64,000 nucleotides of DNA, taken from IMG/VR virus record IMGVR_UViG_3300033571_009404, positions 1 to 64,000 of that record; one strand, written 5' to 3'. Shown here piece by piece: positions 1 to 29,566 of the stretch (its first letter is position 1; every line of letters starts with the position of its first letter). The notes under the pieces are model-generated. The model was not told the origin of the DNA and did no database searches. It saw nothing but the letters and a program-made list of their open reading frames with translations. A program made the translations under genes and the position numbers.

Positions 1-2
1 TG

Positions 3-422
3 CGCGTGTTGCGTGAACGTTACCCGCTGCGCTCGCAGAAGGTGGAGTTCGAAACCGTACTGCGCGTGCTGTCCAACCACAACAGCAATTCGCCGTACAC
101 CCATGCCAACATCGACCTGACTTTCGACGACATCGAGCGTCTGGCCGTGGTGTACGGTGTGACGGTGGTGGTCAAGCCTGTGCAGCGTGAAATCTTCAAC
201 GTGGCATTCCGCCGTGGTGACTACACCATCTCGCGTCTGCAGCAATTACTGGAAGCACGTGGTCGTAAGACCGACGTGGGTCACGTGATTGGCATGCTTG
301 ATCCTGATCGCAAACTGGGCATTACTGCCCACACCATCCTCTCCCGCGAGGATATCCGCTACCTGGCATATCGGCTGGATTTCAAGGCCCACTTTAAGTT
401 CGGCCTGCGTCGCATGCACTAA
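3..422 (+). CDS. 5'-truncated protein with two IF2 N-terminal-domain-like repeats
   Basis: Frame open from window start; segments ANIDLTFDDIERLAVVYGVTVVVK and TAHTILSREDIRYLAYRLDF resemble the C-terminal half of the IF2_N domain. Confidence 0.6.
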   Translation, partial: RVLRERYPLRSQKVEFETVLRVLSNHNSNSPYTHANIDLTFDDIERLAVVYGVTVVVKPVQREIFNVAFRRGDYTISRLQQLLEARGRKTDVGHVIGMLDPDRKLGITAHTILSREDIRYLAYRLDFKAHFKFGLRRMH

Positions 423-452
423 CCATCAACCTCAATCAATAGAAAGAGCAAA

Positions 453-992
453 ATGACTGATACCAATGTTGACTCGCCGCAAGCTTTTGAAGACGTCATG
501 CGAGTCAAGGAAAAAGTGGCGGACTACGATGACGTGTTGATTGGCTTGGGTCGTTTGGCTCAAGCCTTCAAAGACGACATGACCATGTACGCCATTCTGA
601 TCATGAACGATCGGCGTAACGAGTCTCAGCGTACGGTCGCGGTGGCCAGCTACTATCAGAAGTTTGGTCACCTTCCCGACACCCAGGCGAAGATGGGCAT
701 TGCCTGGGAAGAGTACGAGGGTGTTCTGAAGCCTCGTATGCAGCGGTTGCTGTCGGAAGCCATCAACAGCGAGATCGAAGCTGAAAATCGTGAAATGCAA
801 GCCAAGATCACCAAGCTGCAAAACGAGATGCTTGCACAAATGCGCAAGACCCATCAACCGCATCAACTGGGTACCGTCAATGAGATCGCACAGAAGTACG
901 GGATCTCGAAGTCGGAAGTTCGCCGTCTGAAGTCCGAAGGCAAGCTGGAAGAGTTCGTGCAAGAACGTGAAAGTGGTTCTGGTAAGTCATAA
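453..992 (+). CDS. Coiled-coil protein with C-terminal HTH DNA-binding domain
   Basis: GTVNEIAQKYGISKSEVRRLK is HTH-like. Confidence 0.7.
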   Translation: MTDTNVDSPQAFEDVMRVKEKVADYDDVLIGLGRLAQAFKDDMTMYAILIMNDRRNESQRTVAVASYYQKFGHLPDTQAKMGIAWEEYEGVLKPRMQRLLSEAINSEIEAENREMQAKITKLQNEMLAQMRKTHQPHQLGTVNEIAQKYGISKSEVRRLKSEGKLEEFVQERESGSGKS

Positions 993-1019
993 CAACCAAT
1001 AGAAAGGAGTACATCGCAA

Positions 1020-1475
1020 ATGTCCAATAACCTGACGTTTTCTACTTCGGTTCAACGTATCGTTGATATTGCTCAAGTACTGAAGCTTTTCAACGATACG
1101 TGCAAGTACATGCGCACACCGCGTTTTCGTGTGTCCATGAACATTCAGACCTATGAAACCGTCCCGCTGTACGGGGACTTTGACCAACTCTCGATCCGCC
1201 AGAACATGGTGGTGGCAGTAGTGGAGTTGCGTGACATGGATCTGAACAAGGTGGTAGAGAAGGTCGGGTTCGTCATCAATGATCGTCTGATGGCTGATAT
1301 CTGGCCGTTTGTCTACTATCGTGGTGACGGTTTGGAACGCGTGACTCACTATGACCATTCGTCTGTGCTGGGTGCGGGCTATATGGCTCGCTACCTGGCC
1401 ATTCAACTGGATCGTTACATCAACCCTGAAATGATTAGCCAAGTCTTGGCAGATAAGGCAAGCTATGTCGGCTAG
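1020..1475 (+). CDS. Hypothetical protein
   Basis: ORF with AAGGAG SD. Confidence 0.75.
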   Translation: MSNNLTFSTSVQRIVDIAQVLKLFNDTCKYMRTPRFRVSMNIQTYETVPLYGDFDQLSIRQNMVVAVVELRDMDLNKVVEKVGFVINDRLMADIWPFVYYRGDGLERVTHYDHSSVLGAGYMARYLAIQLDRYINPEMISQVLADKASYVG

Positions 1476-1875
1476 TTCTGTTTCTGGATTGCGCCGTCCT
1501 GGTCTACTCGCCCAGTTGCGCATACTGTTAATTGAGTGTGCCCACACCGCCAGTAAAAAGGAACCCGAATTCGACTTGGAACGCATTGTCGATGACGGGG
1601 AACTGGTTACAGCGGTGTGGACTAAATGGATTAATGCGTATCCCGAGGCGCGCCAGTACAACGTAATCGATAATATCGATTACACGCTGACCAAGATCAT
1701 CCACTACAATCCGAATGCATTCATGAGTGCGCGTGCAAGGGATAAATGGATGAAAGAAATCATGGAAAGTTATAACAGTGCTAGACTGTTGCAAGAAGCA
1801 TTGGGTAACTATCCGTCGGATACGCAATTCCGTTTCCCTGAAATTAAAACTCTGAGAGACTTCTCAGTTAAATAA
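1465..1875 (+). CDS. Hypothetical protein
   Basis: ORF overlapping upstream stop, AAGG SD. Confidence 0.7.
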   Translation: MSASSVSGLRRPGLLAQLRILLIECAHTASKKEPEFDLERIVDDGELVTAVWTKWINAYPEARQYNVIDNIDYTLTKIIHYNPNAFMSARARDKWMKEIMESYNSARLLQEALGNYPSDTQFRFPEIKTLRDFSVK

Positions 1876-1887
1876 AAAGGATTACCT

Positions 1888-2697
1888 ATGGAACTTACTT
1901 TTTTCACCAAGACCCTCGACGGTATTGTCAAAAGCTTGGAGCGGTCCGGTGAAACCGGTGTTGGTTACCGCAATGGTTATTTGTTGATCCAGAAGGTCGA
2001 ACTCTACAGTGCGACTTCCCGTATGGTTCATCAAGATTTCCTGAGCATCGTTTATCAGGAAATCGACAACAGCTACGATGAGCGTTTCGATGGTCAGGTC
2101 AGACATCGTTACTTCAATCGTCGGTATTACAAGACGGATTACATCAGCATGATCCAATTACTGGATGCGTTCGATCGCCGTCAGCAGGATGGATCTGATG
2201 AACTCGATGATAGCTTCGGTATGACGTACCGTCAGGCCATGGAGTACATGTGTGAAAAGAACTTGCGTGACTTCATCAGAATCTACACACCGCAAGTACG
2301 CATCGAACATCTGATCAAGCGTGTCAATGACACACTCAGTAAGAGAAATTCTAACTGTCTGATGTTCGACTTGGAACAGGCGATGGCTATACTTGGTTGT
2401 CAGTTGAGACCAGGTTATTACGTAACCAAACAACAAGCTGACGAACTGGTCAATATGTTCTCTATCGAGGTGATTGAAGCATATGACCTGGCTCGCACAA
2501 TCAACGTTCGTCGTTCTATGACGATTGATAAGTACTGTGAGCGATTCAATCAGCCATTGAGCGATGTTATTAATGCCATCAGTGCTGATCCGACCTTTGC
2601 AGGTAAGGTTGTGGAACCTTCCACGAAGCTTACACCATCCGTCATCGAGAGCCTGTTGTACATGCATTTCGATGACGTTGTTGTTAATCGTAAATAA
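1888..2697 (+). CDS. Hypothetical protein with C-terminal IF2_N-like repeats
   Basis: AAGGA SD; MTIDKYCERFNQPLSDVINAI...PSTKLTPSVIESL pattern. Confidence 0.65.
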   Translation: MELTFFTKTLDGIVKSLERSGETGVGYRNGYLLIQKVELYSATSRMVHQDFLSIVYQEIDNSYDERFDGQVRHRYFNRRYYKTDYISMIQLLDAFDRRQQDGSDELDDSFGMTYRQAMEYMCEKNLRDFIRIYTPQVRIEHLIKRVNDTLSKRNSNCLMFDLEQAMAILGCQLRPGYYVTKQQADELVNMFSIEVIEAYDLARTINVRRSMTIDKYCERFNQPLSDVINAISADPTFAGKVVEPSTKLTPSVIESLLYMHFDDVVVNRK

Positions 2698-2709
2698 GGA
2701 GTAGTAAAT

Positions 2710-2907
2710 ATGGAACAAAAGATGTTCGAACGTCAGTTGAAGGAAGCAAAGGAATCACTGACGCAAGCACAAAACATCGTGGACGCATTGATGAACGAAC
2801 CCGATCAAGCCGATTTGTCACAACGTGTTGTATCGGCTGCTCGTATCGCTTCTCAGGCAGCTGCGGATCTTAACATGCTGGGCGGCGCACTGCGCTATAA
2901 CAAGTAA
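2710..2907 (+). CDS. Small helical hypothetical protein
   Basis: AAGGAG SD; 65 aa. Confidence 0.75.
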   Translation: MEQKMFERQLKEAKESLTQAQNIVDALMNEPDQADLSQRVVSAARIASQAAADLNMLGGALRYNK

Positions 2908-2919
2908 GGAGCAGTAATT

Positions 2920-3660
2920 ATGCAACTCATGATGTCTCTGCCTGTCCAGGCTGTTATCAATTCTTTCGTTGCTTTCGAGAAAGCCATCGAAGATCTCGAT
3001 CAACCCTTCGCCGTAGAAGTTCACCACTTCGAATGGCATCAAGGTCAGTTCGGTCTCATCGCTACCATCACTGGTGATGATGGCAAGAGTGGCAAGAGTG
3101 GTCTCGATAAGACTTCGGTTACGATCCACTTCTTCTACCCGAACAACAAGATCGTGGTGGAAGTTCTCGAACGCTACACCAATAATCCGGTTACGAAGTT
3201 CAGCCGGGCATTCGATGCATCTGACTTCAAGGAAGCGGTCAAGCATGCGGTGGATTCGCTTGTGGCTGAGCATATCGCCAGCATGCAAGCCAAACCAACG
3301 GTCAAGCCTTTGGTCTATGCCCCGGACACAGCCTTCTTCCTCAAGCTGTTGTCCGTGGCGCACACGAGCCTGTTCAACAACACCAAGTACCCGGTGGAAG
3401 TGAACATCGGCTCCGAGGACTTCAATCCTTACATGAAGTTCGAGATTCGTGAAGGCGACTACGACAAGGTCTTCGTCAAGTACGAGATCGATGGTCATCG
3501 TATCGAATTCGGTGTGGAAGAAGGTGGCGAGGAATGCTTCGGCGCCTTGATCGATGACGTCGTGTTCCATGAAACTCAGGTCGATGAGATCATGGCACAC
3601 GTGCTGAAGTTGCTCGACATCCTCTACACCAGCCAAGAAGCTGGCAAGTGGGACCGTTAA
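2920..3660 (+). CDS. Hypothetical protein
   Basis: AAGGAG SD; strong codon bias. Confidence 0.8.
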   Translation: MQLMMSLPVQAVINSFVAFEKAIEDLDQPFAVEVHHFEWHQGQFGLIATITGDDGKSGKSGLDKTSVTIHFFYPNNKIVVEVLERYTNNPVTKFSRAFDASDFKEAVKHAVDSLVAEHIASMQAKPTVKPLVYAPDTAFFLKLLSVAHTSLFNNTKYPVEVNIGSEDFNPYMKFEIREGDYDKVFVKYEIDGHRIEFGVEEGGEECFGALIDDVVFHETQVDEIMAHVLKLLDILYTSQEAGKWDR

Positions 3661-3681
3661 TTAATAAGTAAAGGAGTAGTC

Positions 3682-4347
3682 ATGCGGTATAACGTCGGTG
3701 AAAAGTTGTATGTGGTGAACTTCGCCTTCCATGGCCAAGAACCTGAAGAGAACGCGCTGTATCAGTCTCCGTATCTCCGGGGCCTGATGCCGCGCATCTC
3801 CCAGATCCGTCTGAATCAGTTGACGGTGGAAGAACACCACAAGGTGCCGTATATCCATGATCCGGAACAAAAACTGGAACATGACGGTTACATCCTGAAA
3901 GATGACTCGGGTCAGGTTTTCTACAACCAATACCCTTCGTCCCACTATGGTCAATTCAGCGACCACATGGACTATCGCTTCCGGATGAAAGATCCGGATA
4001 CCGATGAGGCGCGTGAAGCCTACGTCAACGACATGGAACTCAACGACCCGCTCCCGCATGAATACATGTTGCTGGAGCAATTCCTGAAGGAACTGCGTCG
4101 TGGCATCACAGCAGTATTCGATGTCATCGCCAAGTATGAAGTCGCTGGTGTTGAGGAGATGGAGAACTATCGTCCTCTGCGCTGGCAGCGTGAGTACCAT
4201 GCGGTGTTGTCCGAGCTGTTGACTGAACTCAACAAGGCATTCAGGCACGCATTCGAAGGTCATGACTACGATCTGGTCCTGAAGCCCATCGATGAGAACG
4301 ATCCCGGCAGTATGAAGTTCTGGGAAGTGGAGTTCAAGACGGTGTAA
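3682..4347 (+). CDS. Hypothetical protein
   Basis: AAGGAG SD. Confidence 0.8.
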   Translation: MRYNVGEKLYVVNFAFHGQEPEENALYQSPYLRGLMPRISQIRLNQLTVEEHHKVPYIHDPEQKLEHDGYILKDDSGQVFYNQYPSSHYGQFSDHMDYRFRMKDPDTDEAREAYVNDMELNDPLPHEYMLLEQFLKELRRGITAVFDVIAKYEVAGVEEMENYRPLRWQREYHAVLSELLTELNKAFRHAFEGHDYDLVLKPIDENDPGSMKFWEVEFKTV

Positions 4348-4348
4348 C

Positions 4349-4379
4349 GTCATAAAGGCTACCGGTTTCCCGGTAGCCT
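4349..4379. terminator. Intergenic hairpin preceded by GTCATAA tag
   Basis: AGGCTACCGG-TTTC-CCGGTAGCCT (4356-4379); no U-tract on the + strand. Confidence 0.6.
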
Positions 4380-4400
4380 AAAATAAAAGGAGTAGTACCT

Positions 4401-4772
4401 ATGAAAACAGTAGCAGGAATAAATGCATTTGTTCTCAGTCAACTTTACGTGGCACTGTATAATGCTGCTTCCGTAAAGGAGAGTGAGAACTCGGTGACCA
4501 TGAAACAGTTCTTTAGTGCGAACATGGTTGAAGTGGTTATGGGCGATGTCGCATGCAACTCAGTCAAAGCATCTTTCAAACTGATCACAGATGATGATCA
4601 TCAGGCTGAGTCGATTCAAATCGTCGTCCATCATCGCGCCAATTCCGACAAGATCATTTACAGTTCACGTGATCGTATCAAGGACTACAACTACGCGAAC
4701 CACATGAAGTTCGTGATTGATCTGATGGATAACGAGTACAATCACTTAAAGGAGTGCAATACCTATGGTTAA
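4401..4772 (+). CDS. Hypothetical protein
   Basis: AAGGAG SD. Confidence 0.75.
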   Translation: MKTVAGINAFVLSQLYVALYNAASVKESENSVTMKQFFSANMVEVVMGDVACNSVKASFKLITDDDHQAESIQIVVHHRANSDKIIYSSRDRIKDYNYANHMKFVIDLMDNEYNHLKECNTYG

Positions 4773-5013
4773 AGTAATATTGCTGATAAGGCATCTCGGT
4801 CCGGATGGTCCTCCGGCCGTTACCAGTTCCATGAAGGTCGAAGACGATGTCTACAAGATCGAGAACTACATGAAGGAAGACATGGAAAAGGCACGCGATG
4901 AATTCATCAGCACTTTCCCTGAATTCCGTCGCGCCCATTGGGCTATTCAGCTGGTGGATATCCGTAACCACGGTATGTCCAGTCTCGACCACATCAAGTT
5001 GGACCCTATTTAA
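4765..5013 (+). CDS. Hypothetical protein
   Basis: AAGGAG SD, overlaps upstream stop. Confidence 0.7.
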   Translation: MVKVILLIRHLGPDGPPAVTSSMKVEDDVYKIENYMKEDMEKARDEFISTFPEFRRAHWAIQLVDIRNHGMSSLDHIKLDPI

Positions 5014-5027
5014 AGGAGGTATTACCT

Positions 5028-6311
5028 ATGCGAAACAATCATTTCATCATGGAGACCATCCATGCTAAACGTGCAGTGGATACGGTGTTTGATTCCGTAC
5101 TCCATGGACTGTTGACGGAGGGTGTCTATCATCAACGTAACACAGTTGTTGGTGTTGACTACATGCTGAAGATCATGGAGTCTCCGCCGCCCAACAGGAT
5201 GCCGATCATCCAATTCAAGAGTTCGGCTATGAGTGCTCCCTGGAAACTGGAACGCTACTACACGCTGAGTGAAGGGCTGATGGCGGCGGTCTTCGGCATC
5301 TGGTCGTGCTGCGAGTACGGCATCAGTCCGCCTGAAAACATCATGATCGGGGACATCACCAAAGATGTTCTGGACTGCATCGAACGTCTGAAAAGTACGG
5401 AGCAATCACATCGACTACGGATGTTCTCCGATTTGCCGCGCTTTGGTTATTCGGGGGATGCAGGTGGTCCTCTGCATCAGACCGCTCAGGAGACTTATGG
5501 GCGCGGCATTTCCCCGCAGTTCGGCAGAGGCAATAGCAATATGGGATACCACCACACCATGCTTCAACCTCGGATCACGCCCGTGAATTTCCGCAGTGGT
5601 ATACGTCTGGATGTGGCGGCTCATCTGGCACATCGTTGGTGTCCTGCTGCGTTTCATGGTCTATTGGATCCGACCGCTGGTATGGTCGGCTTTTGCAATC
5701 ACTGGTGGCCAGGTCCGCAGTATACGAACGACTTCATCATGACTGAGTCCATGCTGACGACGTTCGTGAATGAGCTGGAAAGGGTACATCACGTTCGTGC
5801 TGGTGTGTCTAGCAACATCGCTGAAACGGACATCGTGTTGAAGGCGGGTGTGGAGTACACTCCACTGAGTTTTGTCGAGGAGATCCTGAAACAAGGTAAT
5901 CCTGGTCATACTCGTGATGAGTACCTGACACATCTGGGTTGTCTCGGGGTCGATTTGACCAAACCGTTGACAGATACGATGATGCATCTGTTCGCCTTCG
6001 ACTACTACCTATCGCTCAAGTTCATATCCGAGCAGAACGTTGACAAGGTGAAGCTGAAGGAAGAACTCCTGGCCAAGATCCAACCCAAGTCCAAGAGCGT
6101 AACCGTCAGGGGTGGCATCTGGCTGCGTCAGTTCGGTCGTAATGCGAAGATCGCTGATATCGACTCGCTGATCACTTACTACACGGTCTTCTATCCTGGC
6201 TGGATATCGAATGGCAGTAAACCTGGCAGGAGTGATGACTTCTGGCTGGAACCCTCGCAGGTGAGCATCATGGCCGAAGACATCGGTATCCCGAAGGTGA
6301 TTGTGAAGTAA
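5028..6311 (+). CDS. Hypothetical protein with C-terminal IF2_N-like repeats
   Basis: AAGGAGG SD; ends SDDFWLEPSQVSIMAEDIGIPKVIVK. Confidence 0.65.
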   Translation: MRNNHFIMETIHAKRAVDTVFDSVLHGLLTEGVYHQRNTVVGVDYMLKIMESPPPNRMPIIQFKSSAMSAPWKLERYYTLSEGLMAAVFGIWSCCEYGISPPENIMIGDITKDVLDCIERLKSTEQSHRLRMFSDLPRFGYSGDAGGPLHQTAQETYGRGISPQFGRGNSNMGYHHTMLQPRITPVNFRSGIRLDVAAHLAHRWCPAAFHGLLDPTAGMVGFCNHWWPGPQYTNDFIMTESMLTTFVNELERVHHVRAGVSSNIAETDIVLKAGVEYTPLSFVEEILKQGNPGHTRDEYLTHLGCLGVDLTKPLTDTMMHLFAFDYYLSLKFISEQNVDKVKLKEELLAKIQPKSKSVTVRGGIWLRQFGRNAKIADIDSLITYYTVFYPGWISNGSKPGRSDDFWLEPSQVSIMAEDIGIPKVIVK

Positions 6312-6343: not shown

Positions 6344-6370
6344 GCCCTCCCTTCGGGGAGGGCTTCTTTC
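6344..6370 (+). terminator. Intrinsic terminator
   Basis: GCCCTCCC-TTCG-GGGAGGGC followed by a pyrimidine/T-rich tract. Confidence 0.8.
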
Positions 6371-6425: not shown

Positions 6426-6477
6426 TAATAGAACGGTCTATTGTCCTCTTTTTAACTATGTTTAAGGAAGCCCTATA

Positions 6478-7083
6478 ATGGCACTGCTCACTACCAAGAA
6501 ATACAACATCAAAGAAGTCATCTATCGTTCCAACCCGAACCTGGGTCTGCAAGAGAACATCATGATGGCCATGGACAAGAAGAAATCCGATTTGCTGTTC
6601 CCCGGTCAAGTCAAGCCCAAGCCAGTCATCAACTACGAGTTCTATCTGGACTACGATGGCTACAAAGCCAAACTGCCGGACAGCGCCAAGTGCACGATCA
6701 CCAAATCGTACATGGACACGCTCATCAACAACGCCACCAAGCAATTCGAATCCACTCGCCTGGCGTACAACAAGTTCGTCAAGGCCGATGACAAGAGCAT
6801 CGAATACTGGCATGAGTTGAAGCGTTTCGTGGTCGATGATGAAACCTATGTCAATGACATCGACGCAGCTATCGAAAATGCATGCTACCACAGTACGCGT
6901 GCATTCGCAGAAGGTCGCTACATGCCACGTCGTGTCGTCCGTACGCAGTATCTCATCATCACAACCCACAACCTGTTCGCATTCAATCCGTGGGCTGAAG
7001 GTGAAGCACTGCGCTTGCGTCGTCTGTTTGAAGAGATGCAAGAAGAACGTCTGAAGAATCTGTCCATCACTCCTTGTAAGTAA
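6478..7083 (+). CDS. Hypothetical protein
   Basis: AAGGA SD; strong codon bias. Confidence 0.8.
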   Translation: MALLTTKKYNIKEVIYRSNPNLGLQENIMMAMDKKKSDLLFPGQVKPKPVINYEFYLDYDGYKAKLPDSAKCTITKSYMDTLINNATKQFESTRLAYNKFVKADDKSIEYWHELKRFVVDDETYVNDIDAAIENACYHSTRAFAEGRYMPRRVVRTQYLIITTHNLFAFNPWAEGEALRLRRLFEEMQEERLKNLSITPCK

Positions 7084-7109: not shown

Positions 7110-8843
7110 ATGTTTTCTCATCCATTTTATTTCTTCTGGCAAAACAAGTCTCCGTTTTCCAATTGGTATATCCGGAACTTCAAAGTCAGAGAAATGATCT
7201 TCAATTGCGTTGAGCAATACATGATGTACCAGAAGGCTGTGTTCTTTGGTGATTTGGAAACTGCTAAGCTTATCATGGCAGAATCCAAACCAAAGAAGCA
7301 GAAAGAACTGGGACGTCAGGTCAAAGGCTTCAATCGCATTGATTGGGATTCTGTAGTTGAGGATATCCTCTACACGGCTATCAAGGCCAAGTTCACCCAG
7401 CATCGTGATCTGGGTGAATTGATGCTAAGCATCACTGCGAAAGAATTCGTCGAAGCATCTCCGTATGACCGGATCTATGGTGTGCGATTGTCAATGAATG
7501 ACCCTCGCATCCAGTCAAAGAAATTATGGCTCGGCCTAAACAAGCTTGGGCGTGTGCTGACCCGAGTACGTAACTGGCTGTATGTCAAGAAGAAAGGAAA
7601 GAACATGATCGATCTGTCCCCGCATCATCCAGAAGTCATTATTCTGGATTTGACAGATGTGTTTGCCGATGCACAACGGCGGCTGGCACATACGGGTGAT
7701 GTGAATCTGCTGTTGCCCTCGATGGTCAGTAGCATCATGACGTGTGTGGAATGTCGTGATCCCGATATGACCCGGTTGGAAGTCTATGTCTCTGACTTGA
7801 TCGAACAGTTCAAGAATGATGGCATGCCAACTGAGGATGGTGAAATTGCCGCAGCTATCGCTAAAGACATCGGACGTAAGCTTGTCTATGAGATCGAGAA
7901 GATCGGCGGTTACGATGAGAACGATAATTTCGATTACGATGTCTATCGTGTGGAAATCTCCGGAGCTGTGGTACTGACTCGTCTGGATCCTGTGGGCGCT
8001 CGTGCTCAAGAGAAGAGGAAAGAATGGTTTCCTGATCCGGAAGCTGTTGGTAAATCGATTTCTTCAGGTAGCAGGGTTGACCATATGGTCATGGTCGATG
8101 ACGACGGCAATCCAATCAAGACGTCTGTAGTGGATATCCCTGAACCCACTCAAGAACAGAAGGATCATATTGCTTCTTTCGAAGTTAAACTTCCTTCGCT
8201 TGAAGAAATGGAGAATCATCCGCATCAAGGATACTTCCAAGGCCAACACAATGTGCAATATGCTGCTAAGTTAGGAGAAGTAGTCACTCCTGAACAGCAG
8301 CTGCAGAACTACGAAGCACATGAGCGTCGTGTGGTTATCGAGGAGAATGTCCCGGCTGCTGGTTTCCGTAGTCGTACGGAGTACGATCTCCCCAGTGAAG
8401 ACTTTACTTCATCGACTGTTGAGTCCAATATCAGCAACAAAATCGATAAGATGCTTCATAGCCCTAAGTTCAATATGAAGTTTGCTCCTTGCGATGATCT
8501 GGGAGAAATCTCTGTCAGATTGAACGGTCAAACCATTCAGAATCCAACACCTGAACAATTGTCCGAAGTTGCCAATAAGTTGGGTTTCGATGCAGCTGAC
8601 GTCATCATGGGACAAGACAAAGGTTATCGTGAGGTTCCCTTGTCTGAAGTCAAAGAGTCTCCTTATAAAGAGATTCTCGACAATGCGTTCCAGGATCAGG
8701 AAAGGGTTATCATCAATGCAGCTCCACGCTACGTACCCCTTGGTATCGTAGACGGCGATCAACAACAACAGAAGTGGAAAGACACTACAACAGGGGAAGT
8801 GCTTACCAACGAAGAACGATTTAATCGAGTTTCAAAAGACTAA
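7110..8843 (+). CDS. NADAR (YbiA-like) domain fused to a 412-aa unknown region
   Basis: FSNWY, EQYMMYQKA, KELGRQV, AKFTQH, VEASPYDRIYG and GLNKLG motifs in aa 1-158. Confidence 0.85.
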   Translation: MFSHPFYFFWQNKSPFSNWYIRNFKVREMIFNCVEQYMMYQKAVFFGDLETAKLIMAESKPKKQKELGRQVKGFNRIDWDSVVEDILYTAIKAKFTQHRDLGELMLSITAKEFVEASPYDRIYGVRLSMNDPRIQSKKLWLGLNKLGRVLTRVRNWLYVKKKGKNMIDLSPHHPEVIILDLTDVFADAQRRLAHTGDVNLLLPSMVSSIMTCVECRDPDMTRLEVYVSDLIEQFKNDGMPTEDGEIAAAIAKDIGRKLVYEIEKIGGYDENDNFDYDVYRVEISGAVVLTRLDPVGARAQEKRKEWFPDPEAVGKSISSGSRVDHMVMVDDDGNPIKTSVVDIPEPTQEQKDHIASFEVKLPSLEEMENHPHQGYFQGQHNVQYAAKLGEVVTPEQQLQNYEAHERRVVIEENVPAAGFRSRTEYDLPSEDFTSSTVESNISNKIDKMLHSPKFNMKFAPCDDLGEISVRLNGQTIQNPTPEQLSEVANKLGFDAADVIMGQDKGYREVPLSEVKESPYKEILDNAFQDQERVIINAAPRYVPLGIVDGDQQQQKWKDTTTGEVLTNEERFNRVSKD

Positions 8844-8870
8844 TCTTCTTAATTATCTCAGGGGCGAGAT

Positions 8871-9125
8871 ATGAGCGCTGTAAATCAGGGGACTGTTGTC
8901 CATCAGCAAACTCTGTTAAATGAGGACAACACCAAAGCAGCTACTTTGACTTATCGTAATGGTTCTAACATTCCAGCGGAGTGGGAGTTATCTCAGGATG
9001 GGGATTCTGAACGTAACTTCCTTACACTGGAATTGTACCTAGCGATCAAAGGCATTGCTTTGACCAGACAGGAATGTGGTTTGACACCGGTTGATACGGT
9101 GCAAGCTTCTTTGGAATTCGAATAG
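8871..9125 (+). CDS. Hypothetical protein
   Basis: ORF in operon, AGGGG SD. Confidence 0.6.
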   Translation: MSAVNQGTVVHQQTLLNEDNTKAATLTYRNGSNIPAEWELSQDGDSERNFLTLELYLAIKGIALTRQECGLTPVDTVQASLEFE

Positions 9126-9135
9126 GAATTGTGCG

Positions 9136-9903
9136 ATGGAAAAGAGATTGAAAATGAAGAAGGCGTCCTTCATTGTCTGCGAAGGCATGGATGGATCTGG
9201 TAAGACGACAGTGTCTAAGTATCTACTGGAGTTAATGGGTTTATTTGGCTATGATGTCAAGTGGACGCGTGAACCTGGTGGTACTCCACTGGCTGAAAGT
9301 ATCCGTAACCTGATACTGACAACTGAGATGGATTCTACTACTGAACTTCTGCTGTTTAACGCAGCACGTCGTGATCATGTAGAAAACCTGATCAAGCCGT
9401 CTTTAGCAAAGGACATCACAGTGGTATCGGATCGCTTTGTGGATTCGACCATTGCTTACCAGTGCTACGCTAATCAGCGTTCACCTCTTCATCAAGTACT
9501 ATCTCTGCACCAGACTTGTATCGATTTCGATCCTGACTATGTCATTTACCTTGACATTCTCCCTGAAGTAGCAGCAGCTCGTGCAAATCAGCGTGGCGCT
9601 GGTGACCGTTTCGACAACATGCCAGCCGACTATAAGAAGCGTCTGGAGATGGGGTACCAAGTAGGGATGCTCATGCATAAAGCTAGCACCTCTACTGAAG
9701 TCGTTACCATCGATGCCAATCAAAACCTACTCGATGTATTTGAGCAAGTGTTTAATTGGTTTGTTCGCTACTACTGCGCCACGCATCAACCTGCAGCGTC
9801 ATTCGTCTTTGATAATGAAAAGCATACTAAAGCGCTCGAAAACCCTGTACTCCAGGCGGCGTTAGAACAGCATCGTCAGCACTGGCGTCTTAACTTTAGC
9901 TAA
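9136..9903 (+). CDS. tmk: Thymidylate (dTMP) kinase
   Basis: EGMDGSGKTT P-loop, TREPGGT, SDRFVDSTIAYQ; start moved to ATG 9136 after AGGA. Confidence 0.95.
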   Translation: MEKRLKMKKASFIVCEGMDGSGKTTVSKYLLELMGLFGYDVKWTREPGGTPLAESIRNLILTTEMDSTTELLLFNAARRDHVENLIKPSLAKDITVVSDRFVDSTIAYQCYANQRSPLHQVLSLHQTCIDFDPDYVIYLDILPEVAAARANQRGAGDRFDNMPADYKKRLEMGYQVGMLMHKASTSTEVVTIDANQNLLDVFEQVFNWFVRYYCATHQPAASFVFDNEKHTKALENPVLQAALEQHRQHWRLNFS

Positions 9904-9919
9904 TACGGTAACGTCTACA

Positions 9920-10291
9920 ATGGATGAAAAATACGCATTCTTTGATGACAATGGTCGAGTAAAGGAAATTGAGTATCCGATCTTTACTAAACCATTCGAG
10001 AAAAAGGAACACTGGTTTATCAAGTTCTTGATCTGGACTGGTGCTTTAACTCGTCAGTATGAGTGGTTAAATTTCCATCAACGATACATCATGTTATCGT
10101 TAGCCAATCCCATGCGTTGGTCGATTGCGCTCATGATCCAGATCGATAGCTTAATCGATAGTAAGACTATTGACCCAAATACTCTGAGAGAGGTGAATCT
10201 CTTAATGCACGTGCATGGGGTGCCCGTTGCCCTTGCATGGTATCGTATCTTCGGATACAAGATTCCTATTAACTCAGAGGTGAGAGTATGA
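9920..10291 (+). CDS. Hypothetical protein (paralog of 10288)
   Basis: Shares PxF...H and V..LM....VPV....I.G patterns with the next gene. Confidence 0.7.
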   Translation: MDEKYAFFDDNGRVKEIEYPIFTKPFEKKEHWFIKFLIWTGALTRQYEWLNFHQRYIMLSLANPMRWSIALMIQIDSLIDSKTIDPNTLREVNLLMHVHGVPVALAWYRIFGYKIPINSEVRV

Positions 10292-10728
10292 TAGCCCTAC
10301 CTAGCTACGATTCTCCAGACATTCAAGATGAAGAAGGTACTCTGTCCCACAAGGTCAGGATTCCTATGTTCCAGTACCACATGGAACAAGATCACTTTAT
10401 CTGGAAGGTACTGGATAAGTTGCGTTGTTTGGATCGTGTTTTCATTCCCATTGACAGACGTTCTCGTTTGGTCAAGTACAGGGACCACCCTGAAATCATC
10501 AATGGTAAGTTCGATGCTAATCGTGTCTCCATGACGCGCGAGCAACTCGACGGTATTATCAAGACCATTGATGATGATGCATTTTCAGGTCGTGCTAGTG
10601 CGCGTGACTATTATTGTTATCGCGTGGATCGTTTGATGAACATCGCTAAAGTGCCGGTAGGTACATGCGATTACATCGTACTGGGTATTCGCGTCTACAC
10701 CAAGGATGTGATTTATCCAGTGAATTAA
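10288..10728 (+). CDS. Hypothetical protein (paralog of 9920)
   Basis: GAGG SD; ATGA overlap. Confidence 0.7.
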   Translation: MIALPSYDSPDIQDEEGTLSHKVRIPMFQYHMEQDHFIWKVLDKLRCLDRVFIPIDRRSRLVKYRDHPEIINGKFDANRVSMTREQLDGIIKTIDDDAFSGRASARDYYCYRVDRLMNIAKVPVGTCDYIVLGIRVYTKDVIYPVN

Positions 10729-10818
10729 TTATTGGCAAAAATTAGAGGATGCTTGTATTCTTTTGAATAGAATGCAAGTATTCCTCTAGTGCCTTTATGT
10801 CTTTCATTTAGGAAGAGT

Positions 10819-10983
10819 ATGTCTAATTTAGGTTTTATGTGGTTTAGTTTTGGTGTCATCGTTTTGATCATGTGGATTATCAAGATGTGTGAGAAACCAA
10901 AAGAACCTCCCAAACTCGATCCCAACACCCTGCCGCCAGAAGTGTTAGATGAAATCCGTAAGGAGAACAAACATGGCTTGTAA
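10819..10983 (+). CDS. Small single-TM membrane protein
   Basis: AGGA SD; hydrophobic FMWFSFGVIVLIMWII. Confidence 0.65.
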   Translation: MSNLGFMWFSFGVIVLIMWIIKMCEKPKEPPKLDPNTLPPEVLDEIRKENKHGL

Positions 10984-11107
10984 TGATGCTTTCGTGGAAT
11001 CGATGATTGTCCTCTATAGTCCTGTAGTGGCGGCAATCATCTTAACCGTGTTCACTTATGGTGCTTACCTGTTCCATAAGTACCTGAAACGTAAAGGATG
11101 GGCATGA
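10973..11107 (+). CDS. Small single-TM membrane protein (44 aa, not in ORF track)
   Basis: AAGGAG SD; MACNDAFVESMIVLYSPVVAAIILTVFTYGAYLFHKYLKRKGWA. Confidence 0.65.
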   Translation: MACNDAFVESMIVLYSPVVAAIILTVFTYGAYLFHKYLKRKGWA

Positions 11108-11316
11108 TTCAAAACGACCCACTCTTAACAGGTTTCTGCTATGGACTCCTGATTCTCTTTGTCATCTTCTTTGTGTTCTGGACTTGGATCTGGTTTATTG
11201 ATCCTCCTAAGCCTCCTTCTTACTGGGAATGGCAGGCGACAAGACGGAAGTTCGATAGCGAGATGAAGAAGATCAAAGAAAGGAAAGAAGCATGCCAGAC
11301 GAAAGAGTCGTCCTAA
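11104..11316 (+). CDS. Small single-TM membrane protein
   Basis: ATGA overlap; GLLILFVIFFVFWTWIWFI. Confidence 0.7.
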   Translation: MIQNDPLLTGFCYGLLILFVIFFVFWTWIWFIDPPKPPSYWEWQATRRKFDSEMKKIKERKEACQTKESS

Positions 11317-11498
11317 TTCGCATGGGTAATGACTGGGATTGGTGGCAGTGGTTGTTGTTATTTGTTGTCAGTCTGGTTGCTACGCTTTGCATCATTGTCT
11401 TCCCCGATAAGGGTCCTCGCATGGGTCCTGAAGTCAGGAAGATTTACAAGAGAAAGAAGATTAACAAGCTTAAAGCAAGGAGGCGCTATGGACGTTAG
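11292..11498 (+). CDS. Small single-TM membrane protein
   Basis: AAGGA SD; WLLLFVVSLVATLCIIVF then a basic tail. Confidence 0.65.
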   Translation: MPDERVVLIRMGNDWDWWQWLLLFVVSLVATLCIIVFPDKGPRMGPEVRKIYKRKKINKLKARRRYGR

Positions 11499-12072
11499 TG
11501 CAACGATGGTGCTGACGGTTCTGGCCTGCGCCATCGTCATCATACTCTCAATTGCAGTAGGTGGTATCATCCGGGCCATGAACCCTAAAAGGATGATTCA
11601 AGAATATCGCTTTGTGAAATTGCACGGCGAAAATCATCTACCCATGGTGAGTCAACGATCCACCGACGGTGTGACTTACAAAGTAGCTGTAGGTACAGAA
11701 GATCAATTCGATGCATGGATGTCGATGGGTGTTTTTGATGATGAATTTCCCTACTTCGATTTTGATTTCTTATTAGATCATCGTGGCTGGACGATGTCTG
11801 ACGGTAGCGTCTATATGGTCAACCGTAGTTCCAAAGACAACTACCATGAATATCAGAGCATCATGCATGATCTGATCAAGGAACACCAAAAGCTTTATGG
11901 CGATGAGATTGGCCTTGAATCAACGGGTATGTATATCCCCAGTTATTTACAAGCAGCCATGGAGTATGAATACGCCGATCGTTTCCCAGGGGAATGGGAA
12001 AAGTTCAAAGGTGAAAAAGAAGCAAAGAACTACGTAGAACCCATTGACCATTTCGTCAAACAACTCGCTTAA
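11488..12072 (+). CDS. N-terminally anchored membrane protein
   Basis: AAGGAGG SD before ATG 11488; N-terminal TM helix. Confidence 0.75.
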   Translation: MDVSATMVLTVLACAIVIILSIAVGGIIRAMNPKRMIQEYRFVKLHGENHLPMVSQRSTDGVTYKVAVGTEDQFDAWMSMGVFDDEFPYFDFDFLLDHRGWTMSDGSVYMVNRSSKDNYHEYQSIMHDLIKEHQKLYGDEIGLESTGMYIPSYLQAAMEYEYADRFPGEWEKFKGEKEAKNYVEPIDHFVKQLA

Positions 12073-12088
12073 CTCAAGGAGCATCAAC

Positions 12089-13081: not shown

Positions 13082-13101
13082 TTTTCACAAAAGGTGAGTA
13101 C

Positions 13102-13284
13102 ATGATGAAGAAAAGGAAACTGCGTTACAGACGCTGGCAAGTACCACGAGAAAGAGATCCGAACTTCCGTCGGATGTTTATCAAGTCGTGGCGTCGTGAA
13201 CATTCTCGTATTCGTTATCCCTTGATGTTCCGGGAATGCTACATGATCCATCCTGAGTATTCCAGCTACCTGTTACACGGTTAA
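13102..13284 (+). CDS. Small Arg-rich protein
   Basis: AAGGTG SD; MMKKRKLRYRR. Confidence 0.55.
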   Translation: MMKKRKLRYRRWQVPRERDPNFRRMFIKSWRREHSRIRYPLMFRECYMIHPEYSSYLLHG

Positions 13285-13319
13285 GTACTCACCACCCTCA
13301 ACTAAAAAGAAAGCTATTC

Positions 13320-24363: not shown

Positions 24364-26846
<2,483 letters not shown>

Positions 26847-27482: not shown

Positions 27483-27866
27483 ATGCAATTCGAAAGCATG
27501 GTCAGGAAGCCTGAAGAAATCATTCCAGGGAATATTCTCTGGCGGGTTCAAGTCACTCTGAATGAAGACGGTAGCGTAAATGTTGCCGCCCCATACAAAG
27601 TGATTCCTCGCACTGAAGCTAAGCAACTGTCGGATACTCAATATTTCGTCGGTATCCGTAACGTCATGGGCGGATTCATTATCCCTCTCGCCCTGGACGC
27701 ATTTGCTGTTGGTCACAGTGAGGATTCAGATGAGTTTCGGTTCACTCATTCCCGGTTGTTCCGCAAACGTAAGGATGCGATCAACTACGGGCGTGAGATG
27801 CAATCCTATCAACCTCCCTTAGAAGAAATGAAGTATCATTTCACCATCAAAGGAGATGAAAAGTGA
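27483..27866 (+). CDS. Hypothetical protein
   Basis: AAGGAG SD. Confidence 0.75.
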   Translation: MQFESMVRKPEEIIPGNILWRVQVTLNEDGSVNVAAPYKVIPRTEAKQLSDTQYFVGIRNVMGGFIIPLALDAFAVGHSEDSDEFRFTHSRLFRKRKDAINYGREMQSYQPPLEEMKYHFTIKGDEK

Positions 27867-29566
27867 AAGCACCGAAACCCAAGTCAGAACCCATCAAGGA
27901 TTTCATGACAATGGCGCAAGTCATTGGCAAAGACACCCTGCCTGAAACATCCCAAAACAACAAGGAGCAACAAGCTATGCAAATGCAATCGAATGTGAAC
28001 ATCATCGACACCGACTTCGTCAACCGCGACTGGCTGTGCCGTATCGATCCTGATGCCGAGATGCAAGCCAACATCGTGAATCTGATGGCAGACCGCCGTC
28101 CGTTCACGGTCAAGGAAATCGGCGACGTCTTCGAATTCTTCGGCGACGCTGGTGATCGTGTGAAGTCCGCGCATGTCATGCTGCAGATGAATGCCAAGGG
28201 TTTCTTCAAGACCGTCTCCGGTGGCAACATCGAGATGTACATCCTGAAGGATCGTTTGCCTGGCATGGATCGCCCGAAGCAACCGAAGCTGTTCCGTACT
28301 CCTGATTACTTCGATCGTGATCCGATCGGCGAGATCAAGCGTGCTGATGGCGTCGACATGGCGATCTTCAAGATCCTGTTGTCCGATGGCGAAAAGCGCA
28401 CCGCACAAGAACTGCGTGCTCTGCTCTATCCCTTCGGCTTCACGGCTAATGAAATCTCTGGCAAGCTGAAGACCCTGATGCTGGGGTCCAGTGGCGATGT
28501 CTGGATCGAACGCATCCAACGTGGTTCCGATGTCTGGTACACGGTCAAGAAGGGCTGGAACCTGGCTCGCTTCATCAAGGCACGCAAGGGCAAGCCATCC
28601 GTCGTTTACACGGGTGACGAGCCGGAACTGCCTGCAGCAAAGATCGATGACAAGCAAGAGTCTCTGACTCCGGCAGTCACCGGTCGTGCTGGTACGCACG
28701 TGTCTGTCAGCGAAGTTCAAGCTGCATCTCAGGAGGAAGCTGTGGAAACCAACCAAGTCGACCTGGTCGTGACTGCCAAGGACACGATGGATCAAGCGAT
28801 CTGGAAGGTTACGCAAGACCGCGCAACCTACCTGGTCTCTGAAGTCGCTGCTCTGATCGAAGACTTCGGCTTCAACAAGGGCACTGTCGGTGTGCGCATG
28901 GCCAAGCTGGCTGAAATGGGTTGGTTCACGCGTACTCCTGAGGGTCGTGCTTTCAAGTACACCATGGTGGAAGGTACTGCTTTCCCTATGGCGCAACTTG
29001 AAGTGGTCAAGCCGACTTCGCAAGTTCAGTCTGAACCTGCTGAAGGTAACAAGGTCGAAACCAAGGCACAAGAAGCCATCGTCACCACCAAGGCCGGTCC
29101 GAAGGTCGTGGCTCTGGATGAAGTCCAGAAACCGCGTATCAGCGTGACCGAACTGGCTCAAGAACTGGATGTGACGCCTACTGGCCTGATGTTCTACATC
29201 AAGTCGCGCGGTTTCACCGGTGTCCTGGACATCGATACCCAGTTGACCATCGAACACGCTGCTGCATTGCGTGTTAACTTCAACAAGAACGATGCAAAGG
29301 AAATCGATATGGGTACTGTCACCAATCTGGCAGATGCAGTGAAGAACGACCAAGAACAACCGGCTCTGTTCACCATGATCGTCCAGATCAAGGGTGTGAA
29401 CTTCAGCCTGGTTGAACTGAAGGAACTGACTGTGGAACTGGACGAAGCCATTTCGTTCCTGACCAAGGTCAAGTCCCTGGATGCGAAGATCACCATCAAG
29501 ACCATCCCGCTGTCGCTGGATGAAATGAAGGAACTCGCAGAACGCATCCGCGAACTGAAGCTGTAA
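27863..29566 (+). CDS. Multi-domain nucleic-acid-binding protein: three winged-helix-like repeats plus an IF2_N-like domain
   Basis: Repeats of form D.AI.K...D......E...L...GF....; RISVTELAQELDVTP; alternative start ATG 27977 has an AAGGAG SD. Confidence 0.7.
   Translation: MKAPKPKSEPIKDFMTMAQVIGKDTLPETSQNNKEQQAMQMQSNVNIIDTDFVNRDWLCRIDPDAEMQANIVNLMADRRPFTVKEIGDVFEFFGDAGDRVKSAHVMLQMNAKGFFKTVSGGNIEMYILKDRLPGMDRPKQPKLFRTPDYFDRDPIGEIKRADGVDMAIFKILLSDGEKRTAQELRALLYPFGFTANEISGKLKTLMLGSSGDVWIERIQRGSDVWYTVKKGWNLARFIKARKGKPSVVYTGDEPELPAAKIDDKQESLTPAVTGRAGTHVSVSEVQAASQEEAVETNQVDLVVTAKDTMDQAIWKVTQDRATYLVSEVAALIEDFGFNKGTVGVRMAKLAEMGWFTRTPEGRAFKYTMVEGTAFPMAQLEVVKPTSQVQSEPAEGNKVETKAQEAIVTTKAGPKVVALDEVQKPRISVTELAQELDVTPTGLMFYIKSRGFTGVLDIDTQLTIEHAAALRVNFNKNDAKEIDMGTVTNLADAVKNDQEQPALFTMIVQIKGVNFSLVELKELTVELDEAISFLTKVKSLDAKITIKTIPLSLDEMKELAERIRELKL

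What the first reader, a model, noticed from the sequence alone, without database searches (positions are those of the whole stretch)
3..6311. Dispersed family of proteins built from IF2 N-terminal-domain-like repeats
Seen: ORFs 3-422, 1888-2697 and 5028-6311 contain repeated ~50-aa units. Each unit reads as short strand, helix, helix, then L(T/S)xxxxxxLAxxxGxxV, e.g. NIDLTFDDIERLAVVYGVTVVVK, HTILSREDIRYLAYRLDF, STKLTPSVIESLLYMHF and DFWLEPSQVSIMAEDIGIPKVIVK. A fourth copy lies in ORF 27863 (ISVTELAQELDVTPTGLMFYIKSRG...DTQLTIEHAAAL, ~29132-29281). Known: this pattern is typical of the IF2_N domain of bacterial initiation factor 2, a small nucleic-acid-binding fold in the IF2 region that associates with the ribosome. 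Inference: the phage has expanded a stand-alone IF2_N-like module into a multigene family. It may act as an IF2 mimic or ribosome adaptor that redirects translation initiation, or as a DNA/RNA-binding array.
Basis: partly seen in the sequence, partly recalled or inferred. Interest (0 to 1): 0.72.

Follow-up and report, generated by a model that had tools for sequence, protein, structure and literature searches.

The report
IF2-N-like modules in orphan phage proteins
Two or three otherwise unrelated, one-of-a-kind proteins of a phiKZ-like giant phage appear to carry a small three-helix module shaped like the N-terminal domain of bacterial initiation factor IF2, but they are not a detectable gene family and nothing yet shows that they touch the ribosome.

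Summary
The four ORFs and the quoted motifs are real. ORF 3-422 is the 3' part of a 225-aa gene (P0001) that crosses the origin of a 310-kb phiKZ-like phage record.

At sequence level there is no repeat family. The units are no more alike than shuffles. The motif fails leave-one-out. The IF2_N HMM gives one sub-threshold hit in the whole genome (ORF27863, 13.9 bits against a cut-off of 25.3). All four proteins are orphans in billions of sequences.

ORF5028 and units U1 and U4 cannot be judged. ORF27863 is mainly three winged-helix repeats.

Best reading: real, selected orphan genes that share a small IF2-N-like docking module. Function is unknown. The ribosome-mimic idea is untested. In E. coli this domain binds NusA, not the ribosome.

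The parts
3..422 (+). 3' part (aa 87-225) of gene P0001. The full gene is 225 aa, pI 9.5, and starts at record base 309,772 across the record's origin.
3..176 (+). Unit U1 of P0001 (aa 78-144; the first 9 residues lie before the origin). Predicted helix-helix-strand-helix-strand, but pLDDT is under 50, so the fold cannot be judged.
216..401 (+). Unit U2 of P0001 (aa 158-219), an IF2-N-domain-like module. It is the only confidently modelled part of P0001 (pLDDT 59-77).
453..992 (+). Neighbouring 179-aa gene with a C-terminal helix-turn-helix (aa 141-167, nt 873-953). The Pfam and PHROG hits to Sigma70_r4, HTH_17 and excisionase-type families are sub-threshold.
1888..2697 (+). Gene P0002 (269 aa, pI 5.5). 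It is an orphan even under exhaustive HMMER against 1.84 billion representatives.
2248..2415 (+). Candidate unit U4 of P0002 (aa 121-176). It is helical in the model, but pLDDT is under 50. It is only tentatively part of a tandem IF2-N-like arrangement.
   Evidence: IF-2 N-terminal regions aligned to aa 126/144-261, not significant.
2512..2688 (+). Unit U3 of P0002 (aa 209-267), the best-supported IF2-N-domain-like module (pLDDT 67-74).
5028..6311 (+). Gene of 427 aa, an orphan, last gene of the block. The claimed unit U5 is aa 362-427 (nt 6111-6308). There is no evidence for or against an IF2-N-like fold.
   Evidence: ESM model pLDDT 0.35, no IF-2 neighbours.; variants mostly synonymous.
6344..6363 (+). 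GC-rich hairpin with a T-rich tail, terminator-like, closing the gene block. A similar hairpin lies at record bases 309,724-309,746, just upstream of P0001.
27863..29566 (+). Gene P0003 (567 aa, orphan). It holds three homologous winged-helix repeats: W1 nt 28058-28252, W2 nt 28346-28558, W3 nt 28775-28978. After them come unit U6 and a C-terminal coiled-coil-like tail.
   Evidence: PaaX and Penicillinase_R at aa 312-368.. W2-W3 z 9.4, W1-W3 z 3.9..
29132..29287 (+). Unit U6 of P0003 (aa 424-475). It is the only stretch of the whole phage genome that the IF2_N HMM touches (13.9 bits, below the 25.3 cut-off). The same stretch also hits HTH_24, HTH_20 and HTH_11.
   Evidence: hhalign probability 75%, E 2.6e-5.

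Best explanation
SETTING. The region is a block of about 11 tightly packed + strand orphan genes, from record base 309,772 across the origin to window base 6311. It lies between two GC-rich hairpins in a phiKZ-like jumbo phage.

WHAT THE GENES ARE. They are real and under purifying selection, but they are not paralogues of one another.

THE SHARED MODULE. At least two of them carry a roughly 55-65-residue module: a short strand, two short helices, a strand, then a longer helix. These are P0001 (unit U2, perhaps also U1) and P0002 (unit U3, perhaps also U4). Its predicted geometry is that of the IF2 N domain (the Pfam IF2_N fold, N1 of E. coli IF2). A third protein outside the block, P0003, combines three winged-helix repeats with a module that is weakly IF2_N/HTH-like in sequence.

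INFERRED MECHANISM (not shown). In IF2 this domain is a peripheral, non-catalytic binding module. By analogy, the phage module would be a small autonomous docking domain. It would tether the variable remainder of each protein to a nucleic acid or to a protein of the gene-expression machinery. P0001 is basic and a candidate nucleic-acid binder. P0003 is a multi-winged-helix DNA binder.

ORIGIN. Ancient capture of IF2_N and convergence on a simple fold cannot be told apart.
For: REAL GENES.
- Tight + strand tiling.
- 18 synonymous against 4 non-synonymous codon changes in variants from rhizosphere and biofilm metagenomes.

FOLD.
- AF2 DSSP pattern, with pLDDT 59-77 in U2 and U3 only.
- 4b3x residues 1-69 is described as two small helices folded on a long helix (PMC3663118).
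- ESM Atlas neighbours of P0002 are all IF-2 or IF2_N proteins with the ESM model.
- Rows 1-4 of the Atlas search with the AF2 model are also IF2_N proteins, including stand-alone IF2_N proteins of 131 and 218 aa (59 residues aligned, rmsd 2.9-3.3).
- IF-2 is 9-10 of the top 30 Swiss-Prot AFDB hits for both models.
- As a control, the poorly modelled ORF5028 gives no IF-2 neighbours.

U6. IF2_N at 13-13.9 bits. hhalign against 28 true IF2_N copies gives probability 75%, and 0 of 60 shuffles reach the score.

P0003. The winged-helix repeats are significant.

CONTEXT.
- The phage is phiKZ-like: PhiKZ_VTX at 228 bits, a split RNAP beta-like gene, and a PhiKZ014 homologue.
- Early phiKZ proteins are known to bind host ribosomes (PMC10914614).
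Against: - The models are single-sequence, with mean pLDDT 39-41. Only about 50 residues in each are usable.
- Foldseek against PDB and BFVD gives only noise.
- The AFDB IF-2 hits have E 0.4-1.6 and rmsd 12-33 A. They may partly reflect disordered, helical N-terminal regions of IF-2 models.
- AF2 and ESM may reproduce a memorised domain from a loosely compatible pattern.
- There is no sequence support for U1-U5.
- U3 is acidic and its second helix has no basic residues, which argues against DNA binding for that unit.
- The NusA docking test gave no answer.
Confidence: 0.45

Rival explanations
1. There is no shared module. The four stretches are unrelated helical segments that happen to fit a loose amphipathic pattern (an N-capped helix after a short strand). 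The IF2-N hits come from low-confidence single-sequence models of a very simple three-helix arrangement.
For: - No pairwise similarity between units.
- The motif profile fails leave-one-out.
- The best in-genome sequence match to a unit (U3, z 13.9) lies in an antisense, non-coding frame inside a 797-aa gene. This shows what chance can produce.
- Foldseek against PDB and BFVD gives noise.
- Whole-model pLDDT is about 40.
Against: - Two unrelated sequences independently put the same pre-specified domain at rank 2 and rank 3 of 48,161.
- Independent predictors (ESM and AF2) and independent libraries agree for U3.
Confidence: 0.3
2. The modules are helix-turn-helix or winged-helix type DNA-binding domains. 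By my recollection, the IF2 N domain, MerR, Xis and gpNu1 fall in one SCOP 'putative DNA-binding domain' superfamily. On this reading the block encodes phage transcription or DNA regulators.
For: - U6 hits HTH_24, HTH_20 and HTH_11 better than it hits IF2_N.
- P0003 has three winged-helix repeats.
- The neighbouring ORF 453-992 has an HTH.
- P0001 is basic, with basic inter-helix loops.
- Its language-model neighbours are HTH or transposase clusters, though with scores under 0.7.
- Structural hits include the pSK1 Par DNA-binding domain, phage Mu C and TFB2M.
- A true IF2_N sequence itself weakly hits a MarR winged helix.
Against: - P0001 and P0002 have no HTH family hit.
- U3 is acidic and has no basic 'recognition' helix.
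- IF2-N outranks the DNA-binding folds in both searches.
- In a nucleus-forming phiKZ-like phage, DNA binders would need import into the phage nucleus. This is unknown here.
Confidence: 0.15
3. The phage captured IF2_N and expanded it into a multigene family. Its members mimic IF2 or act as ribosome adaptors that redirect translation initiation.
For: - Fold-level resemblance to IF2-N.
- Precedent that early phiKZ proteins bind ribosomes (PMC10914614).
- phiKZ-like phages depend wholly on host ribosomes.
Against: - No homology among the members, and no Pfam membership.
- No G domain or other IF2 parts.
- E. coli N1/Domain I binds NusA and is reported not to bind ribosomes noticeably (PMC12297416).
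- This phage's PhiKZ014-like candidate ribosome binder lies elsewhere, at record bases 181,966-182,616.
- No IF2_N-like phage proteins were found by tblastn. The only hits were host infB contamination.
Confidence: 0.1

Closest known systems
IF2 N domain (Thermus thermophilus IF2 residues 1-69, PDB 4b3x; E. coli N1, aa 1-50; Pfam IF2_N PF04760)
   Same: - Size about 55-65 aa.
- Short strand, two short helices, strand, longer helix.
- Predicted superposition at 2.4-2.6 A over 51-59 residues.
- A peripheral position in a larger protein.
   Different: - No sequence membership: 0-13.9 bits against a cut-off of 25.3. True copies score 28-73 bits.
- The module is C-terminal rather than N-terminal.
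- No translational GTPase is attached.
- Longer loops between helix 2 and helix 3.
Stand-alone bacterial IF2_N-domain proteins (ESM Atlas clusters of 131, 170 and 218 aa; a DGR target protein with IF2_N plus FGE-sulfatase, PMC5758913)
   Same: IF2_N-type module outside IF2. They are the best domain-level structural neighbours of U3.
   Different: Those proteins pass the Pfam model and the phage proteins do not. Their function is equally unknown.
PhiKZ014 and other early phiKZ ribosome-associated proteins (PMC10914614)
   Same: Small early proteins of phiKZ-like phages that could dock onto the host translation machinery. PhiKZ014 also ends in a helix-loop-helix domain.
   Different: No homology: PHROG 16056 does not hit these ORFs. 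The phage's PhiKZ014 homologue is a different gene, at record bases 181,966-182,616.
Winged-helix regulators (PaaX, BlaI/Penicillinase_R, MarR type)
   Same: P0003 repeats W1-W3, and perhaps U6.
   Different: Three tandem copies in one chain plus a coiled-coil tail. The scores are just under the Pfam cut-offs. Not applicable to P0001 or P0002.
C-terminal domain of KsgA / TFB2M rRNA methyltransferase-like proteins
   Same: Structural neighbour of both units: 6ero_B is rank 1 for P0002 and rank 13 for P0001, and KsgA chains also appear.
   Different: It is only part of a larger enzyme fold. No methyltransferase domain is present here.

Membership tests
Pfam IF2_N (PF04760) | Score at or above the curated gathering cut-off (25.3 bits) against the family HMM | tested here: not met
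   The whole phage genome gives one match, 29135-29272, at 13.9 bits. hmmscan gives 13 bits for ORF27863 and nothing for the other three. True IF2 copies in 65 bacterial genomes score 27.7-72.9 bits.
Pfam IF2_N (PF04760) | Three-dimensional fold of the IF2 N domain (two short helices packed on a longer helix, with small strands) | tested here: inconclusive
Pfam IF2_N (PF04760) | Usual context: N-terminal to the G domain of a translational GTPase | tested here: not met
   None of the four proteins has a GTP_EFTU or IF-2 domain. In P0001, P0002 and ORF5028 the modules are C-terminal.
IF2 N1-type function | Binding to NusA KH2/AR1 (E. coli N1) or to ribosomal subunits | not testable with these tools
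   Complex prediction with the C-terminal half of a Methylophilus NusA returned 'no answer' (score 0.00). The tool states this is no evidence either way.
Paralogous multigene family within the phage | Detectable sequence homology between members | tested here: not met
   BLASTP finds nothing. Unit pairs score z<2. The leave-one-out profile is at background. By contrast, genuine families in the same genome are found easily, such as 12-13 DUF7941 paralogues at E down to 1e-100.
Winged-helix / HTH DNA-binding domains (Pfam HTH clan) | Match to an HTH-clan HMM, or significant similarity to a recognised winged helix | tested here: inconclusive
   P0003: PaaX 21.4 bits (cut-off 24.8), HTH_24 20.5 (cut-off 21.9), Penicillinase_R 15.6. 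Its internal repeats W1-W3 are significant. P0001 and P0002: no HTH hit.
PhiKZ014-like ribosome-binding proteins (PHROG 16056) | Match to the PHROG profile | tested here: not met
   None of the ORFs of the finding hits it. The genome's only match is at record bases 181,966-182,616.

The most novel reading that the evidence does not exclude
A phiKZ-like jumbo phage has placed IF2-N1-like docking modules on several otherwise unrelated host-takeover proteins. The modules would plug these proteins into the site that IF2alpha uses on the host gene-expression machinery: NusA KH2/AR1 on transcribing RNAP, or a ribosomal site. There they would compete with IF2 or relocate phage effectors to nascent host or phage mRNAs. 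This would be a modular 'IF2-N mimicry' strategy not described for any virus.
Probability: 0.1. Interest if true: 0.75.

Novelty: new variant of a known kind. Interest (0 to 1): 0.4.

Why it matters
The function of the bacterial IF2 N domain has long been unclear. A NusA link that may couple transcription to translation initiation was found only in 2025.

If phage proteins really reuse this fold as a docking module, they would be natural probes of that interface. They would also add to the very short list of phage factors that target translation initiation or the expressome.

As it stands, the finding mainly shows two things. First, a pattern read by eye can point to a real fold-level resemblance that no sequence method detects. 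Second, 'family' and 'IF2 mimic' are claims well beyond the data.

Tried and rejected
1. Sequence homologues. Four searches returned only the proteins themselves:
- the 5.8-billion word-indexed search for P0001, P0002 and P0003;
- exhaustive HMMER over 1.84 billion representatives for P0002.
Further searches found nothing either: megablast and tblastn against 50,697 phage records and IMG/VR pattern scans. So no alignments were available for AF2.
2. Synteny. I looked for diverged orthologues next to relatives of the neighbouring NADAR gene. 22 viral loci share only the NADAR domain.
3. Pfam, PHROG and PDB sequence searches of the three main ORFs found nothing.
4. My own IF2_N HMM, built from 28 proteobacterial copies, gave P0001, P0002 and ORF5028 no signal above shuffles.
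5. An apparent paralogue of U3 (record bases 140,888-141,397, z 13.9) was rejected as a gene. It is antisense inside a 797-aa ORF and shows no DNA similarity.
6. I tested whether the ORFs are distant members of the large DUF7941 paralogue array at 272-287 kb. They are not.
7. Foldseek of whole low-confidence models against PDB and BFVD gave noise. The Atlas shape search with the P0001 model gave mixed results.
8. NusA docking by complex prediction gave no answer.
9. tblastn of a true IF2_N domain against phage records returned only host infB contamination.


Full report
**1. Setting**

The window is the first 64 kb of a 310,114-bp virus record. The record has an 87-bp direct terminal repeat, so the unit length is 310,027 bp. 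GC is 48%.

The phage is phiKZ-like:
- a PhiKZ_VTX vertex protein at 228 bits;
- a split multisubunit-RNAP beta-like gene;
- a homologue of the ribosome-binding protein PhiKZ014.

All three lie outside the window.

The phage has no close relative in the phage, IMG/VR or protein collections.

Downstream of the flagged region the window holds nucleotide and NAD metabolism genes:
- NADAR
- thymidylate kinase
- a PRPP-synthetase-like gene
- NAMPT/NAPRTase
- ThyA
- NAD-dependent ligase
- RNA ligase

**2. The observation**

All four ORFs and all quoted peptides are present.

ORF 3-422 is only the 3' part of a gene. That gene starts at record base 309,772 and crosses the origin. Its product is P0001, 225 aa.

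From P0001 to ORF 5028-6311 there are about 11 + strand genes, tiled without gaps. The long antisense ORFs in this stretch are shadows.

The block is framed by two GC-rich hairpins. One lies at record bases 309,724-309,746. The other is a terminator-like one at window 6344-6363. A promoter-like site follows at 6452-6479.

The genes are real. Contigs of related strains in a rhizosphere metagenome and a biofilm metagenome differ from the window at 22 codons. Of these changes, 18 are synonymous.

**3. Is there a repeat family in sequence? No.**

- BLASTP finds no similarity among the four proteins.
- I cut out seven candidate units.
- A profile of the 23-residue tail motif was built while leaving each protein out. 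It ranks the left-out protein 10th, 10th, 34th, 220th and 110th of 388 phage proteins. The next-best real protein scores no better than shuffled proteomes.
- The only significant match to a unit is U3 against record bases 140,888-141,397 (z 13.9). That stretch is an antisense frame inside a 797-aa gene and has no DNA similarity. I treat it as chance, and as a warning.
- Genuine paralogue arrays in the same genome are detected without effort.

**4. Is it IF2_N in sequence? Only marginally, and only for ORF27863.**

- The Pfam IF2_N model, run over the six-frame translation of the whole phage, gives one match, 29135-29272. It scores 13.9 bits against a cut-off of 25.3.
- hmmscan gives 13 bits for that stretch. 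The same residues match HTH_24, HTH_20 and HTH_11 better.
- True IF2_N copies in 65 bacterial genomes score 27.7-72.9 bits.
- hhalign of each unit against 28 true copies supports U6 (probability 75%, and 0 of 60 shuffles reach the score). U3 is marginal (7% of shuffles). It gives nothing for U1, U2, U4 and U5.
- All four proteins are orphans. For P0002 this holds even under exhaustive HMMER against 1.84 billion representatives.

**5. Is it IF2-N in fold? Probably, for two units.**

Without alignments, AF2 gives poor whole-protein models, with mean pLDDT 40.5 and 38.6. In each protein one stretch is modelled at pLDDT about 60-77.
- U2 (P0001 aa about 160-210)
- U3 (P0002 aa 210-256)

DSSP gives strand, helix, helix, strand, helix for both.

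VIA-align against 48,161 solved chains:

|---|---|---|---|---|---|---|
| P0001 aa 153-214 | 4b3x_A res. 1-55 | 4.6 | 2.4 A | 51 | 3 | 52 |
| P0002 aa 205-269 | 4b3x_A res. 1-59 | 5.3 | 2.6 A | 59 | 2 | 61 |

4b3x is Thermus thermophilus IF2. Its N domain (residues 1-69) is described as two small helices folded on the tip of a long helix (PMC3663118).

Independent support for U3:
- The ESM Atlas model of P0002 (pLDDT 0.54) has only IF-2 or IF2_N neighbours in its ten rows.
- The AF2 model searched against the Atlas returns IF2_N-bearing clusters in rows 1-4. These include stand-alone IF2_N proteins of 131 and 218 aa (59 residues aligned, rmsd 2.9-3.3).

In AFDB Swiss-Prot, IF-2 is 10 of the top 30 hits for P0001 and 9 of the top 18 for P0002. 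The alignments span U1+U2 and U4+U3. E-values are 0.4-1.6 and rmsd values are large, so this is weak. It may partly reflect disordered N-terminal regions of IF-2 models.

As a control, ORF5028 has an ESM model at pLDDT 0.35 and gets no IF-2 neighbours.

Foldseek against PDB and BFVD with the whole models gives noise.

U1, U4 and U5 cannot be judged.

**6. ORF27863 (P0003)**

It holds three homologous winged-helix units: aa 66-130, aa 162-232 and aa 305-372. W2-W3 scores z 9.4. The third unit matches PaaX and Penicillinase_R just under the cut-offs.

U6 is not similar to these units.

P0003 is best read as a multi-winged-helix DNA-binding protein with one extra IF2_N/HTH-like module and a coiled-coil-like tail.

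**7. Function**

Nothing here shows function.

That is doubtful for the best-studied copy. E. coli Domain I/N1 (aa 1-50 plus strands 57-90) binds NusA KH2/AR1. The evidence is pull-down, photo-cross-links and loss of binding on deletion of the NusA C-terminus. The same paper reports that it does not noticeably bind ribosomes (PMC12297416).

I tried a docking prediction of the module-bearing halves of P0001 and P0002 against the C-terminal half of a Methylophilus NusA. It gave no answer, which is no evidence either way.

The host guess rests only on three things:
- the phage ligase's best bacterial matches, at about 47% identity;
- GC content;
- the sample types.

phiKZ-like phages transcribe with their own RNA polymerases. 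That makes a NusA target less obvious. They rely fully on host ribosomes, and early phiKZ proteins do bind ribosomes (PMC10914614). So a translation-side partner remains possible.

- P0001 is basic (pI 9.5), with basic inter-helix loops.
- P0002 and U3 are acidic.
- A single shared ligand is therefore not obvious.

**8. Verdict**

- Observation: partly confirmed. The stretches are real and the helix pattern is real. There is no sequence repeat, and the proteins are not 'built from' repeats.
- Interpretation: partly supported. An IF2-N-like fold is plausible for U2 and U3. U6 has weak sequence similarity to IF2_N. Family membership, gene-family expansion and IF2 mimicry are not supported or are untested.

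The best reading is a small IF2-N-like docking module shared, by descent or by convergence, among otherwise unrelated orphan genes of a singleton phiKZ-like phage. Confidence is 0.45. The main rival is a chance resemblance of simple helical segments, at 0.3.

Noticed in passing
window 1-87 and record bases 310,028-310,114: There is an 87-bp exact terminal repeat, so the record is circularly closed or permuted. The first window ORF is therefore a gene cut by the record's origin. The database copy of the protein differs at one residue (E91V).
   Followed up: yes
window 28058-28978: ORF27863 contains three homologous winged-helix repeats (W2-W3 z 9.4) with a shared 'FGF' turn. It looks like a tandem multi-winged-helix DNA-binding protein and has no relatives in the databases.
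   Followed up: partly
record bases 140,888-141,397 (minus strand; L001:3889-4398): An antisense ORF inside a 797-aa + strand gene matches unit U3 of ORF1888: 34% identity over 61 aa, z 13.9, in-genome E 0.003. There is no DNA similarity. Probably chance, but unusually strong.
   Followed up: partly
record bases 271,936-287,142 (L100): A tandem array of 12-13 paralogues of Pfam DUF7941 (E down to 1e-100). Next to it is a second array of five roughly 350-aa paralogues at 280-286 kb. A third array of four paralogues lies at 130-135 kb on the minus strand. These are the real multigene families of this phage.
   Followed up: partly
record bases 181,966-182,616; 186,881-187,786; 234,577-235,716: Three phiKZ-type markers: a homologue of the ribosome-binding protein PhiKZ014 (PHROG 16056, E 3.5e-8), the PhiKZ_VTX vertex protein (228 bits), and a multisubunit-RNAP beta-like gene. 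The phage belongs to the phiKZ-like jumbo phages.
   Followed up: partly
window 7110-15883: An NAD-related cluster: a NADAR-domain protein with a long unknown C-terminal extension (577 aa), thymidylate kinase, a PRPP-synthetase-like gene, and a NAMPT/NAPRTase-family gene. It resembles phage NAD+ reconstitution sets used against NAD-depleting defence (that comparison is from memory).
   Followed up: no
window 24373-26406: The NAD-dependent DNA ligase's best bacterial matches are Methylophilus species (about 47% identity). The phage's DNA is also present at low depth in a rhizosphere metagenome and a biofilm metagenome. This is a weak hint that the host is Methylophilaceae or another betaproteobacterium.
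   Followed up: partly
window 6344-6363, 6452-6479; record bases 309,724-309,746: GC-rich GGGAGG/CCTCCC hairpins frame the orphan gene block. A 10/12 sigma-70-like site follows the downstream hairpin. Only 8 such hairpins occur in the whole genome.
   Followed up: partly
models of P0001 (aa 28-211) and P0002 (aa 134-269): The flagellar regulator Flk (Flk_N, PF27202) recurs as a structural neighbour of both models. In AFDB it is rank 1 for P0001 and rank 17 for P0002, and it is Atlas row 6 for P0002. Its cytoplasmic part may contain similar small modules.
   Followed up: no
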